Assembly (NCBI GenBank): GCA_964106645.2 | Contig: OZ067042.1 | DNA from: Podarcis pityusensis | Taxonomy: Eukaryota | Length of the DNA: 64,000 nucleotides | Reading direction: 5' to 3' (one strand) | Shown here: positions 24,501 through 27,800 of the stretch, piece after piece | How positions within the stretch are numbered: position 1 is the first letter of the stretch | Layout of the letters: the number at the start of each line of letters is the position of its first letter | The notes under the pieces: generated by a model | Database searches by the model: none | What the model saw: the letters and a program-made list of their open reading frames with translations, nothing else | What the model was told of the DNA's origin: nothing | Made by a program: the position numbers and the translations under genes

Positions 24501-24836
24501 ACAGTGCAATTTAACACACAGAGCAATCTGAAGCGGTACTGCCGTTCCTCAAGGTTCTCTCTACCCAACTGCAACTGTTAGTCTTGGAGCCTCAGTCCAA
24601 CTGAACCCTCATTCTGAAGGAAGGATGAGGAAAGGCATGGGCCCCTGAAGTTCAGTTGCACTCACTGGTATCCCCCATCCCTCAGTCAGCTGGAAGGCAG
24701 ACTTGGCAACGGAAGCTAGCATCATAAAATGGTGCAGTAATAGAAGTAACTGGACCAGGAAGAGGAGGCATCTGCCCCAATGATGTCATAGCCGTTAGTG
24801 GTAGCTGGGGGGCGGGACTGGTCATGCAGCCTTGTG

Positions 24837-27800
24837 TCAGGAGTAATGATTGTAGAGGGGCGGGGCATGAAGAGTGCCATTCTGAAAACAATGCTGACGA
24901 GAAGCCATGTATTCTGCATAACTGATTGTCACCTTCTCACTGCGGTATCTGAAAGAAAAAAGCATTGGATCTTTAAAAAAAAAATACATTTGTCAACGAA
25001 ACAAAGTCAGCAAATCACCAACAGCTGTATTCGGAATTCTGTTGTAGCAACAAAAATTGTTTAACCTTTCAAATTATTTATTTCAATTCCAGCTTAATAC
25101 GGATGAGGCCCACAATCCACAGGGGCTCAGTAGTCATTGCCGACTGGAGCCCTTCTAAATGGCTGCAGAGTGATGGCAGGTCCTTCTCTTCACTGCCGGA
25201 TCCCTCACTCACTCCTTTCCTCTGTGCTTGCTTTGTCTTCCTATTTGCCTAAATCTGCTGGTAGCAGAGGTGAGAAGCAGGAGCGGCTTCCATTTGCTTC
25301 CTTACTCTCTCCCTCCAGGCATAAGGAGCTGGAAGTGGATGCTGCGTCTCATCTTGCTGCCTAACCATCACACCAGTGGGCCCAAAAAGAAAGCATACAA
25401 AGGAGGAAATGGTAACTGATGGCAGAGAAAAAGAAAGCAGCCACCACTGCCAGCAGTGGGGAGGAGTGTGTCCCAGCCAGCCCAGTAACCTGTGTGTGTG
25501 TGTGTGTGTGGGTGTGGGTGTGGGTGTGTGCACATTGCCCAGGCAAAACCAAAGTTGGCTCTGGCAGCCAGTATTTGTTATTGTGAAAATTAAAAGCAAC
25601 AATTTAAATACAATGACTGAACAAAACAACAAGGTTTAGGCACCACTGTTGGGGGCAGTGAGGAAATTCAGAAAACTGCAGGATCTGGAGCACAAAGAGC
25701 AATCTTAAAACTTACCATCAGCAATGAAAGTAGTAATGACTTTAGTTGCTGACAACTACCAAAAAGTAAAATATGTCATTTACCTGGTGAGTTTAATAGT
25801 TTTCCTAAAATCATTGGTAATTGGAGCCTTAAAACCACCTTTCCTGAGCAAGGAGTCTATTGTCTGAATCTGATCCCAATCTGTTAAAAAAAAAAGCAAG
25901 CAGCAGTGAACTAAATACAGGCTCATTTCAAGAAAAAGGGATAGGCTCTCAAAAGAAAGATAAGCAAGTTCAAATTACTGTTCCAACTGTTCCAACAAAT
26001 TCAGTTCCAACTGAAAACAACAATTTAGTCAACAAAGTCATATGACATTTCCAATTATCCTATTTTAGTCATATATAGCAATCAAGTTAGTCACATTTTC
26101 AAAGTAAGACACAGCTGCACATCAAACACAGTATAAATCCACTACTCTCCAGTAATGGTGCAGTGCGGAGACCTGATTTAATGAATTACACTTTGGTCTT
26201 TTGACTCAATTCCAGGAGGAGATGTGATCCTCTGAATGGTGGAAGAAATGTTTTGAACAATTACAGTGGTGGCAACTGCTCATTCTTCAACTGTTGTCCA
26301 TGTTTGCAGCACAAAACTTAGTGCTGAGGGAGGATAGAAGGGTCATCTGACGTTGTGCTTGTGTGATCAGGTGAGGCTGAAGAGGAAACCCACACACAAT
26401 GTTGAAAAAAACCTCGGAAGGGCAAAACCTGATTCAACAGTAAACTAAGCCAGGCATTCTTTATGGCAAAGGGATGGGAGGAAGAACACCAAAGTCTTAG
26501 CAGTAATAAAGAAAATTGCTTTTAAGACATGGTTGGTCTTGAGGGGAAAAACATGTGCCATTGAATGAATAACTAGCACTGTACCTTTTGAGCATTTTAA
26601 AGGGCAGATTTTTAAAATAATTCAGCCATAGATAATTAATGGCTTTAGGTGACCTCCACAGCTGCTGTATAAGCCAAAATCCACAATCCAAATCCTGATA
26701 TTTAGACCATTTTCCTTCAGTGTAGATTGTTTCAAGCTCACCTTGTTCCTTAGCAACCTCAGGTAAATATGTTGCTGTGCGTTTGACACCTTTCTCATTG
26801 ATGAACTCAATTCTGATTCCATGGATTCCCACCTAGCAATGGAAACATAAACGTCAACTGAGATGTAGTTCCTGTAACAATGTACAAAACATTTTCCAGC
26901 TGCCATGCATCCTACCAGCAGTCCAACCTTGTCAGGATAAAGGCCTCCACCTTGCTTCCATTTCTTGCATCTGCGATATCATGTCATTTCCTAGGACAAC
27001 TCTATTGTGTACTGCCATCTCTTTTGGCCCCAGAGGCAATTTCTCCAAGGCAGACCAAATTAATTAGTTTCAGCAAGCCCCACTATTTCAAAATGTAAAA
27101 TATATGTCCTTCACCCCATATGCCACTATAACAGTATGGTCTTATGCTTGTTACACAGAAGCAAGTCCCAAAGCGTTTAATGAAATTTACTTTCATATAA
27201 ATGTGCACAGGATGACCCTGAACAGTACAATCCTAATCATGTCAGGAACTTTGATGGGACTTCTGTTGAATTCAGTTAAGTGGAATTAGGACTGCAACGT
27301 TAGTCTAATAATTATCTTCCCTTCTCATACGCTGAACTGAAGTAATATTGATATATTATTCCACTTTTGCATTCTTTGTCAGTCTTCCATCTTTCCAACC
27401 TCATTTTTCTAGCTATATAACCACAATCTACCCTGATAATAAAACAGACACATTACCATATACTAACCCGAACCCAAATGGTATGAGACAGTGATGCAGA
27501 GATCCAAATGCACCTGTTCTCACCTCCCAATCCAAGTAGTCAGTGGCATCCTCAAAATTAGTGAGGAGGGAGACAGAGCAGAAAAGTTTAGGCAGCTCCT
27601 CACGAGTCAGGGGTGGAAACCTGCTGTCCTTAAGTGCACTATAGAAGGGGAACAGAACACACACACACAACCAAAAACAAGCACCATAAGGTTTAAATCA
27701 AGCATTTTCTTACATTTGCAGCCTCATTTCATCCCAGGACAAGGGACATCACTTTAGGTCAGAACAGGTTTAAGCACATTACATGGAGAATTAAATAAAA

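What the first reader, a model, noticed from the sequence alone, without database searches (positions are those of the whole stretch)
24722..24842. AMMECR1L ends in an antizyme-type UCC-UGA +1 frameshift site that opens onto a 38-aa extension ending in a CaaX box (CTIL*)
Seen: on the minus strand the CDS ends ...AAT CAT TAC TCC TGA C (TCC at 24842-24840, TGA at 24839-24837). Skipping one base gives an open +1 frame from 24838 to a stop at 24724-24722, encoding [38 protein letters not shown]. In-frame readthrough would add only a few residues (X-HKAA*). The +1 frame is closed upstream by a TGA near the start of the last exon, so simple exon skipping cannot reach it. Established: UCC-UGA is the polyamine-stimulated +1 programmed frameshift site of vertebrate ornithine decarboxylase antizyme, which gives the same Ser-Asp junction. 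A C-terminal Cys-a-a-Leu is a geranylgeranyltransferase-I substrate motif. Inference: a fraction of ribosomes may shift and produce a 348-aa isoform that keeps the whole AMMECR1 domain and gains an aromatic-rich, prenylated membrane anchor, a possible recoding switch between nuclear and membrane forms. From memory (unverified), the paralog AMMECR1 also ends in YNHYS*, which would fit a constrained nucleotide signal. I know of no description of this.
Basis: partly seen in the sequence, partly recalled or inferred. Interest (0 to 1): 0.92.

Follow-up and report, generated by a model that had tools for sequence, protein, structure and literature searches.

The report
Conserved +1 frameshift tail on AMMECR1L
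The stretch just after the AMMECR1L stop codon is a hidden coding piece read one base out of frame. It has been kept for over 400 million years in this gene and its sister gene AMMECR1. It adds a short tail ending in a lipid-anchor signal, most likely through a ribosome slip at the same UCC-UGA site that antizyme uses.

Summary
On the minus strand AMMECR1L ends TCC TGA C (24842-24836). The +1 frame then runs 38 codons to CTIL plus a stop (24838-24722). In one genome this could be chance: 15-25% of such frames stay open, and no RNA structure follows.

Comparison with other species changes the picture. The same TCC-TGA-C and an in-register +1 frame ending ...WSSY(F/L)YYCTIL-stop are present in every AMMECR1L examined (snake, birds, turtle, placentals, marsupial, Xenopus). 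They are also present in the paralog AMMECR1 of seven frogs and cod.

- **Substitutions:** they fall on third positions of the +1 frame (amniotes 16 synonymous to 5 not, P=2e-6; frogs 13 of 14, P=2e-7).
- **dN/dS:** cod against frog gives 0.08-0.14 in +1 and above 2 in the other frames.
- **Phase:** the phase of variation flips at the stop codon.
- **Length and end:** tail lengths differ only by whole codons, and the Cys is always fourth from the end.

The tail is therefore protein-coding. The likeliest route into it is antizyme-type +1 ribosomal frameshifting (about 0.7). An alternative splice acceptor inside the last exon is not excluded (about 0.15). No antizyme-like pseudoknot or 5' module is present. 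I found no literature on this.

The parts
37320..37726 (-). AMMECR1L first coding exon (ATG at 37726-37724)
   Evidence: ORF. It is 100% identical to P0001 and close to Pantherophis P0138. tblastn. The donor TA|gtgagt is visible.
28579..28689 (-). AMMECR1L coding exon 2
   Evidence: acceptor ttttcag|T, donor AG|gtaaag.
27524..27638 (-). AMMECR1L coding exon 3
   Evidence: acceptor tatag|T, donor GAG|gtgaga.
26742..26832 (-). AMMECR1L coding exon 4
   Evidence: acceptor gctag|GTG, donor CAAG|gtgagc.
25784..25880 (-). AMMECR1L coding exon 5 (ends in phase 2, AG|)
   Evidence: acceptor aacag|AT, donor CCAG|gtaaat.
24840..24948 (-). Frame-0 coding part of the last exon, ending ...YNHYS
   Evidence: In amniotes and frogs, variation here falls on frame-0 third positions ([1,1,20] and [0,0,15]).
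24836..24842 (-). Proposed shift site TCC TGA C (UCC in the P site, UGA stop, C after it)
   Evidence: Identical in all 29 loci (24 unique sequences) of AMMECR1L and AMMECR1. UCC-UGA is the ancestral antizyme +1 site (PMC1874602).
24725..24838 (-). +1-frame extension, 38 codons, under purifying selection at the protein level
   Evidence: One search gives the translation. Searches give conservation, the synonymous bias and the phase flip.
24725..24736 (-). CaaX box codons Cys-Thr-Ile-Leu
   Evidence: The Cys is fourth from the end in every lineage. Codons vary synonymously (TGC/TGT, ACC/ACA/ACT, ATT/ATA).
24716..24724 (-). +1-frame stop TGA (24724-24722) followed by TGC TAG, a second in-frame stop two codons on
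   Evidence: Frogs have TGA TGA and cod has TGA TGA TAG. Xenopus AMMECR1L uses TAA.
24929..24931 (-). TGA in the +1 frame that closes it near the start of the last exon
   Evidence: It is forced by the frame-0 codons K-V-T or K-M-T in all sequences.
24882..24896 (-). Two in-phase CAG codons (24896-24894 and 24884-24882) that could in principle act as alternative 3' splice sites into the +1 frame
   Evidence: Each is CAA in some lineages: Sarcophilus for the first, Pantherophis and 6 of 7 frog AMMECR1 for the second. No transcript evidence was obtained.
24840..24881 (-). Last 14 codons of ORF1, with reduced synonymous variation in amniotes (possible 5' stimulator or dual coding)
   Evidence: Only codons -11 and -8 vary among 14 sequences, against 15 of 22 codons upstream. 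The effect is weaker in frog AMMECR1.
24702..24712 (-). 5' arm of a conserved helix, starting 10 nt after the +1 stop
24428..24438 (-). 3' arm of that helix (10 of 11 pairs with 24712-24702)

Best explanation
AMMECR1L, and its paralog AMMECR1, encode two proteoforms from one mRNA. Most ribosomes stop at UGA after ...YNHYS. A fraction, with UCC in the P site and the poorly terminated UGA-C in the A site, move one base forward as on antizyme mRNA. They read GAC (Asp) and translate 34-38 further codons. The result is a full-length AMMECR1 domain protein with a Ser- and aromatic-rich tail ending Cys-Thr-Ile-Leu, which has the form of a geranylgeranyltransferase-I CaaX box. The tail would tether this proteoform to membranes.

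Shown: the site, the open frame, its conservation in both paralogs, and protein-level purifying selection on the +1 frame starting at the stop codon.

Inferred: that the frame change is ribosomal (+1, or the indistinguishable -2), that the Cys is prenylated, and any regulation or efficiency.
For: - **Site and frame in the window:**
- **Same site and tail in AMMECR1L elsewhere:** TCC-TGA-C and an in-register +1 ORF ending ...WSSY(F/L)YYCTIL-stop occur in a snake, tinamous, 10 Laurasiatherian assemblies, a turtle, the Tasmanian devil and Xenopus laevis.
- **Same in the paralog AMMECR1:** cod and 7 frogs.
- **Codon-position test:** amniote AMMECR1L shows 16 synonymous to 5 nonsynonymous changes in +1 (P=2e-6). 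Frames +2 and 0 show 1:20 and 5:16. Frog AMMECR1 shows 13:1 (P=2e-7), and the peptide is identical in all seven frogs.
- **Phase flip:** variation sits at frame-0 third positions up to the stop ([1,1,20] and [0,0,15]). It sits at +1 third positions after it ([15,3,3] and [13,1,0]). Rates per nt are similar on both sides.
- **dN/dS, cod against frog:** 0.08-0.14 in +1, above 2 in the other frames.
- **Tail lengths:** 38, 36 and 34 codons, so indels come in whole codons.
- **Other frames closed:** frames 0 and +2 carry stops in frogs and Xenopus.
- **Splice signals near the site:** there is no AG dinucleotide between codon -7 and the stop.
- **+1 frame upstream is unconstrained:** +1 residues upstream of the stop vary freely. 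Codon -8 (CCN) uses all four bases.
- **Annotated isoforms:** of 360 fetched AMMECR1 and AMMECR1L proteins, including many RNA-supported predicted isoforms, none ends in CTIL except two bat retrocopies.
- **Known biology of the site:** UCC-UGA is the ancestral antizyme +1 site and works in heterologous contexts (PMC1874602).
Against: - There is no direct evidence of translation or frameshifting.
- No stimulatory RNA structure was found after the site, in a single-sequence fold, a consensus fold of 11 sequences or Rfam.
- The antizyme 5' module A (UGG-UGC) is absent; the context here is CAU-UAY.
- TCC-TGA invariance could also follow from a constrained Pro-Asp in an alternatively spliced +1 reading.
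- Every species keeps at least one in-phase AG inside the last exon, so the splice route stays open.
- In amniotes, the zone of reduced synonymous change (last 14 codons) starts right after one such AG.
- Mammalian AMMECR1, shark and other fish AMMECR1L DNA could not be fetched.
Confidence: 0.7

Rival explanations
1. An alternative 3' splice site inside the last exon supplies the +1 frame. Exon 5 ends in phase 2. Splicing to the AG of a frame-0 CAG codon would put the rest of the exon in +1, downstream of the +1 TGA. The candidates are codon -19 (24896-24894) and codon -15 (24884-24882). The isoform would lose the last 14-19 residues and gain a linker plus the CTIL tail.
For: The arithmetic works for both CAGs. 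Every sequence examined keeps at least one of them. Amniote AMMECR1L shows reduced synonymous variation in the last 14 codons, starting just after the -15 CAG. A phase flip at the stop is also expected under this model, because frame 0 dominates in the overlap. Dual-coding exons made by splicing are far commoner than frameshifting in vertebrates (background in PMC12551717 and the preprint listed).
Against: - Neither AG is conserved. The -15 CAG is CAA in Pantherophis and in 6 of 7 frog AMMECR1. The -19 CAG is CAA in Sarcophilus. The tail is intact in all of these.
- The 40 nt upstream of these AGs is the most variable part of the exon, including purine changes, so there is no sign of a constrained polypyrimidine tract.
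- Several other AGs lie between the normal acceptor and these sites.
- Frog AMMECR1 shows no dual-coding constraint upstream of codon -5.
- No CTIL-ended isoform appears among 360 fetched proteins from over 100 annotated species.
- The model gives no reason for the last sense codon plus stop to be exactly UCC-UGA in both paralogs (roughly 1% by chance).
Confidence: 0.15
2. The tail is translated on its own as a 34-38 residue prenylated micropeptide. This would need reinitiation or non-AUG initiation near the AMMECR1L stop codon, and the peptide would not be joined to AMMECR1L.
For: Comparative data show only that the +1 frame is coding from the stop codon onward. They do not show what it is attached to.
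Against: No AUG lies in the +1 frame at or after the stop. The upstream +1 AUG at 24919 is absent in cod AMMECR1, and the +1 frame there is not under selection. The site lies about 930 nt into the coding sequence, beyond many AUGs. The invariance of UCC-UGA-C would be left unexplained.
Confidence: 0.06
3. It is an ordinary stop codon followed by an ultraconserved 3'UTR, with RNA-level constraint only. The open +1 frame and the CaaX-like end are accidents.
For: The amniote AMMECR1L 3'UTR is very conserved in general. A 38-codon open frame has 15-25% chance in one genome. A conserved helix lies just downstream.
Against: RNA-level constraint does not produce a three-base periodicity of substitutions, four-fold degenerate use of CTN at one Leu codon, or dN/dS of 0.1 in one frame only. 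It also does not produce whole-codon indels or a stop fixed exactly four codons after a Cys. All of these hold in two paralogs separated before jawed vertebrates radiated.
Confidence: 0.02
4. The frame change is made at the RNA level, by loss of one base through editing or polymerase slippage near the stop codon.
For: None specific. It would give the same protein.
Against: There is no homopolymer run at the site (TACTCCTGACAC). No such editing system is known in vertebrate nuclear mRNAs.
Confidence: 0.02

Closest known systems
Ornithine decarboxylase antizyme (OAZ1-3) +1 programmed frameshifting
   Same: The shift site is identical: UCC in the P site followed by a UGA stop, with the next codon read as GAY (Asp), giving a Ser-Asp junction. 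It is conserved across vertebrates. The stop codon is an integral part of the site (PMC1874602).
   Different: - The gene family is unrelated (AMMECR1 domain, PF01871).
- The shift is not needed to make the main protein; it only appends 34-38 residues.
- There is no 3' pseudoknot.
- The 5' context is CAU-UAY, not module A UGG-UGC.
- The base after UGA is C, not U.
- Polyamine sensing is unknown.
- In lacking obvious stimulators it most resembles antizyme 3.
PLEKHM2 +1 programmed frameshifting (Sci Adv 2025, PMC12551717)
   Same: It is a phylogenetically conserved +1 frameshift in a vertebrate nuclear gene, first recognised from a conserved overlapping ORF that no transcript isoform could reach. 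It yields a second proteoform with a different C-terminus.
   Different: PLEKHM2 shifts on UCC_UUU_CGG, an influenza-like site with P-site re-pairing, inside the coding sequence and not at a stop codon. It has been confirmed by reporters and mass spectrometry, whereas this case rests on comparative evidence only.
C-terminal targeting signals added by stop-codon readthrough (peroxisomal LDHB and MDH1; from my own knowledge, not checked here)
   Same: Recoding at the natural stop codon of a complete protein appends a short extension. The last residues of that extension are a sorting signal, so one mRNA gives two locations.
   Different: Those cases read through in frame 0 and add a PTS1 tripeptide. 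Here frame 0 closes after 1-4 codons, the extension is in +1, and the signal is a lipidation box.
CaaX proteins modified by geranylgeranyltransferase I (Rho, Rap and Ral GTPases, G-gamma subunits; from my own knowledge)
   Same: The tail has Cys exactly four residues from the C-terminus, an aliphatic residue at a2 (Ile) and Leu at X. The motif and the position of the stop are invariant across lineages.
   Different: There is no polybasic stretch or second Cys upstream. Instead a Trp/Tyr/Phe/Ser-rich stretch precedes the Cys. Prenylation has not been shown.

Membership tests
Antizyme-type +1 programmed ribosomal frameshift signal | Shift site UCC-UGA (a sense codon followed by the ORF1 stop) | tested here: met
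   TCC TGA at 24842-24837. Invariant in 24 unique sequences of both paralogs.
Antizyme-type +1 programmed ribosomal frameshift signal | A +1 ORF continuing from the site that is under protein-coding selection and cannot be reached by standard decoding | tested here: met
   Searches give the synonymous bias, the phase flip and dN/dS of 0.08-0.14. The +1 frame is closed upstream. An in-exon alternative acceptor is not excluded.
Antizyme-type +1 programmed ribosomal frameshift signal | 3' RNA pseudoknot or stem-loop close to the site | tested here: not met
   The single-sequence fold has z = +1.1. RNAalifold on 11 sequences found 0 pairs. No Rfam family matched at E<=1 (the best match had E=1.6, below its gathering score).
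Antizyme-type +1 programmed ribosomal frameshift signal | Conserved 5' modules (module A, UGG-UGC, immediately upstream) | tested here: not met
   The upstream context is AAY CAT TAY, against UGG-UGC-UCC-UGA in PMC1874602. Amniotes do show reduced synonymous change in the last 14 codons, so a different 5' element is possible.
Antizyme-type +1 programmed ribosomal frameshift signal | Frameshift efficiency raised by polyamines | not testable with these tools
   This needs reporter assays with spermidine or DFMO.
Antizyme protein family | Sequence homology to ODC antizyme | tested here: not met
   The protein is AMMECR1L, with the AMMECR1 domain PF01871.
CaaX prenylation substrates (GGTase-I class) | Cys at the fourth position from the C-terminus, with the stop fixed right after X | tested here: met
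   All lineages end C-T-I-L followed by a stop. The stop is TGA or TAA, and the codons vary synonymously.
CaaX prenylation substrates (GGTase-I class) | X = Leu (or Phe) and an aliphatic a2 | tested here: met
   a2 = Ile and X = Leu in every sequence. That this specifies GGTase-I rests on established knowledge and was not tested here.
CaaX prenylation substrates (GGTase-I class) | Covalent geranylgeranylation of the Cys | not testable with these tools
   This needs isoprenoid-probe labelling or mass spectrometry.

The most novel reading that the evidence does not exclude
AMMECR1 and AMMECR1L form a second, ancient vertebrate gene family that uses the antizyme UCC-UGA +1 frameshift. The arrangement predates the duplication of the two genes, so it is older than jawed vertebrates. 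The shift is not used to make the protein. It diverts a set fraction of a complete, very conserved protein into a geranylgeranylated, membrane-anchored form. If the site shares antizyme's sensitivity to polyamines or termination efficiency, the localisation of this little-understood protein would be set by translational state. That includes the X-linked disease gene AMMECR1.
Probability: 0.6. Interest if true: 0.92.

Novelty: new variant of a known kind. Interest (0 to 1): 0.9.

Why it matters
Conserved ribosomal frameshifting in vertebrate nuclear genes is very rare. The 2025 PLEKHM2 paper (PMC12551717) lists only antizyme (+1), a few virus-derived -1 cases, an untested ASXL1 prediction and PLEKHM2 itself. 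A second family using the antizyme site, in two paralogs and from fish to mammals, would be a notable addition. It would show that UCC-UGA can work without the antizyme pseudoknot or 5' modules.

It would also add a hidden, strongly selected 34-38 residue coding segment and a probable lipid anchor to AMMECR1 and AMMECR1L. The function of these proteins is still unclear. AMMECR1 is an X-linked disease gene, so variants in what is now called the proximal 3'UTR could be coding changes.

Even if the route proves to be splicing, the conserved CaaX-ended proteoform is unannotated in every species examined.

Tried and rejected
- **Structure near the site:** the single-sequence fold, the consensus fold and Rfam gave nothing.
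- **Deeper or missing taxa:**
  - The shark Scyliorhinus had no DNA because the file was too large.
  - Stegostoma and Pyxicephalus isoforms were not on record.
  - For mammalian AMMECR1 (narwhal) the gene range was too long.
  - So mammalian AMMECR1, cartilaginous fish, non-teleost ray-fins, cyclostomes and invertebrates are untested.
- **Search with the 65-aa +1 ORF:** it found only six unnamed short ORFs from Logan contigs. One is a more diverged 34-codon tail (P0359). Two look like damaged copies.
- **Literature:** no paper links AMMECR1 or AMMECR1L to frameshifting, recoding, PhyloCSF signals or prenylation. Supplementary tables were not searched.
- **Spliced model:** I searched with the first coding exon by reference and then with database proteins.
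- **Human sequence:** no contig I took for human was fetched. Hominid proteins listed were not used.
- **Rejected readings:** in-frame readthrough is rejected because frame 0 closes after 1-4 codons. Exon skipping or upstream frame-changing splicing is rejected because the +1 frame is closed at 24931-24929.
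Full report
**1. 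What is in the window**

The window comes from a squamate reptile. Its AMMECR1L exon 1 is 100% identical to an unnamed Logan protein, and the closest named protein is from the corn snake.

AMMECR1L lies on the minus strand in six coding exons: 37726-37320, 28689-28579, 27638-27524, 26832-26742, 25880-25784 and 24948-24840. Together they make 310 codons.

The CDS ends AAT CAT TAC TCC TGA C. From 24838 the +1 frame reads 38 sense codons that end Cys-Thr-Ile-Leu, followed by TGA at 24724-24722. Frame 0 closes after four codons. The +1 frame is closed upstream by TGA at 24931-24929.

**2. Is it more than chance in this genome?**

No. An open run of 38 codons has probability 0.15-0.25 here, and the +2 frame is open for 51 codons. 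The RNA after the site folds no better than shuffled sequence. Rfam finds nothing relevant, including the antizyme element.

**3. Orthologs and paralogs**

I searched with the first coding exon by reference. I then used database proteins to list orthologs and fetched their genes with flanks. This gave 28 loci besides the window, or 24 unique sequences around the stop.

All of them have TCC TGA C. All have an open +1 frame that ends ...W-S-S-Y-(F/L)-Y-Y-C-T-I-L followed directly by a stop.

- **AMMECR1L:** two Pantherophis assemblies, two tinamous, ten Laurasiatherian assemblies, a turtle, the Tasmanian devil and Xenopus laevis.
- **AMMECR1 (the paralog):** seven frogs and cod.

Tail lengths are 38 codons in most amniotes and 36 in Pantherophis (a 6-nt deletion). 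They are 34 in Xenopus AMMECR1L and in frog and cod AMMECR1.

In Xenopus AMMECR1L the first 21 codons of the tail have diverged almost completely. The frame and the end are kept, while frame +2 is closed. In frogs both other frames carry stops.

**4. Coding signature**

- **Amniote AMMECR1L (13 sequences with 38 codons).** 21 variant states lie in the tail, 15 of them on +1 third positions. That is 16 synonymous to 5 nonsynonymous, against an expected synonymous share of 0.26 (P = 2e-6). The same changes score 1:20 in frame +2 and 5:16 in frame 0.
- **Frog AMMECR1 (7 sequences).** 13 of 14 changes lie on +1 third positions (P = 2e-7), and the peptide is identical in all seven. One Leu codon uses CTC, CTG, CTT and CTA.
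- **Phase flip.** Variation sits at frame-0 third positions through the last exon ([1,1,20] and [0,0,15]). It sits at +1 third positions in the tail ([15,3,3] and [13,1,0]). Rates per nucleotide are similar on both sides.
- **Cod against frog AMMECR1.** dN/dS is 0.08-0.14 in +1 and 2-5 in the other frames, with dS near saturation.
- **The CaaX codons.** They vary synonymously (TGC/TGT, ACC/ACA/ACT, ATT/ATA) and the stop is TGA or TAA. The Cys is always fourth from the end.

The tail is therefore translated and under purifying selection in both paralogs. AMMECR1L occurs in sharks (protein P0156) and AMMECR1 in teleosts, so the arrangement predates the duplication and the radiation of jawed vertebrates. 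That last step is an inference.

**5. How the +1 frame is reached**

The last frame-0 synonymous difference is at the Tyr codon, 4 nt before the stop. The first +1 synonymous difference is at the second tail codon, ACA/ACG/ACT. The switch is therefore bracketed within about 9 nt around TCC TGA C.

No AG dinucleotide lies between codon -7 and the stop. The +1 residues upstream are unconstrained: codon -8, CCN, uses all four bases.

UCC-UGA is the ancestral antizyme +1 site. It supports frameshifting in foreign contexts and needs the adjacent stop (PMC1874602). Reading GAC after skipping the U gives the same Ser-Asp junction. The C after UGA is, from general knowledge, the weakest termination context. 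I take +1 ribosomal frameshifting as the best explanation. A -2 shift would give the same frame.

It is not an antizyme-family signal in full:

- There is no pseudoknot or shared structure.
- The 5' context is CAU-UAY, not UGG-UGC.
- Amniotes show reduced synonymous change in the last 14 codons (2 of 14 variable, against 15 of 22 upstream). This could mark a different 5' stimulator.

**6. The main rival**

Exon 5 ends in phase 2. An acceptor at the AG of a frame-0 CAG codon inside the last exon would therefore read the rest in +1, downstream of the +1 TGA. The candidates are 24896-24894 and 24884-24882. The phase flip at the stop does not discriminate between the models, because frame 0 would dominate in the overlap. 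Every species keeps at least one such AG, and the amniote constraint zone starts just after the second.

Several points count against this rival:

- Each AG is lost in some lineage with an intact tail. These are Sarcophilus for the first, and Pantherophis and 6 of 7 frog AMMECR1 for the second.
- The sequence upstream of them is the most variable part of the exon.
- Frog AMMECR1 shows no dual-coding constraint upstream of codon -5.
- None of 360 fetched proteins, many of them RNA-supported predicted isoforms, ends in CTIL, apart from two bat retrocopies.
- Splicing gives no reason for the last codon and stop to be UCC-UGA in both genes.

My odds are: frameshifting 0.7, in-exon acceptor 0.15, separate micropeptide 0.06, the rest small.

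**7. What the tail does (inferred)**

C-T-I-L with Leu at the last position fits the geranylgeranyltransferase-I rule. A stop fixed exactly after it, in every lineage, is what a CaaX box requires. The preceding W-S-S-Y-(F/L)-Y-Y stretch is the most conserved part of the tail. A D-(T/S)-x-x-x-D-Q-S motif at the start is also shared by both paralogs, except in Xenopus AMMECR1L. The likely outcome is a membrane-tethered fraction of an otherwise soluble or nuclear protein.

**8. Novelty**

Full-text searches found no paper joining AMMECR1 or AMMECR1L to frameshifting, recoding, PhyloCSF or prenylation, and none containing the tail peptide. The PLEKHM2 paper (PMC12551717) lists the few known vertebrate cases, and this is not among them.

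I rate it a new variant of a known kind. The shift site is known. It sits in a new gene family, without the known stimulators, and it is used to append a lipidation tail to a complete protein.

**9. Limits**

The evidence is comparative only. Mammalian and bird AMMECR1, cartilaginous fish, cyclostomes and invertebrates were not obtained. No contig taken for human was fetched or compared.

Noticed in passing
window 24712-24702 with 24438-24428 (minus strand); L019 and L022-L028 just after the +1 stop: An 11-bp helix has its 5' arm starting 10 nt after the +1-frame stop, and it is conserved in both paralogs. In cod and frog AMMECR1 it is a local hairpin with a loop of about 20-40 nt. Between cod and frogs it shows one compensatory change (A-U to C-G) and one G-C to G-U change. 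In amniote AMMECR1L the partner lies about 285-330 nt downstream, with 10 of 11 pairs. It is absent from Xenopus AMMECR1L. Its spacing would put it at the mRNA entrance of a ribosome terminating the tail ORF. Its role is unknown.
   Followed up: partly
proteins P0154 (Pipistrellus kuhlii) and P0169 (Logan); related chimeras P0004, P0153: Vespertilionid bats carry a diverged copy of AMMECR1L that I take to be a retrocopy. A deletion in its last-exon region, which I estimate at about 28 nt, fuses the +1 tail in frame. The 261-285 aa ORF stays open and still ends in CTIL. In Eptesicus and Cnephaeus the copy is annotated as fused to zinc fingers. This may be a natural hard-wired version of the extended proteoform, or an annotation artefact.
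   Followed up: partly
window 24848-24846 and equivalents in all loci: The His codon three codons before the stop is CAT in all 24 unique sequences and never CAC. The flanking Asn and Tyr codons differ synonymously between the paralogs.
   Followed up: partly
protein P0359 (Logan, unnamed species): This is a more diverged AMMECR1L-type +1 ORF whose tail is 34 codons instead of 38. It begins D-N-K-Q-H-D-Q-S and ends in the same W-S-S-Y-F-Y-Y-C-T-I-L. It represents one more lineage with a whole-codon length change.
   Followed up: no
window 41200-42500: A GC-rich stretch (about 50% against a 40% background) lies upstream of the first coding exon. It is presumably the AMMECR1L CpG-island promoter and 5'UTR exon.
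   Followed up: no
window 25400-25560: A (CA)n/(TG)n microsatellite lies in the last intron. It shows up as His-Thr and Cys-Val repeat ORFs.
   Followed up: no
window 47710-47861: A run of 152 N, which is an assembly gap or a masked stretch. It was left as it is.
   Followed up: no
window 45715-45882 (minus strand): A 55-aa ORF with a Lys-rich end (...KKVSKLKRKEKV) looks like a coding exon of a neighbouring gene. It was not identified.
   Followed up: no
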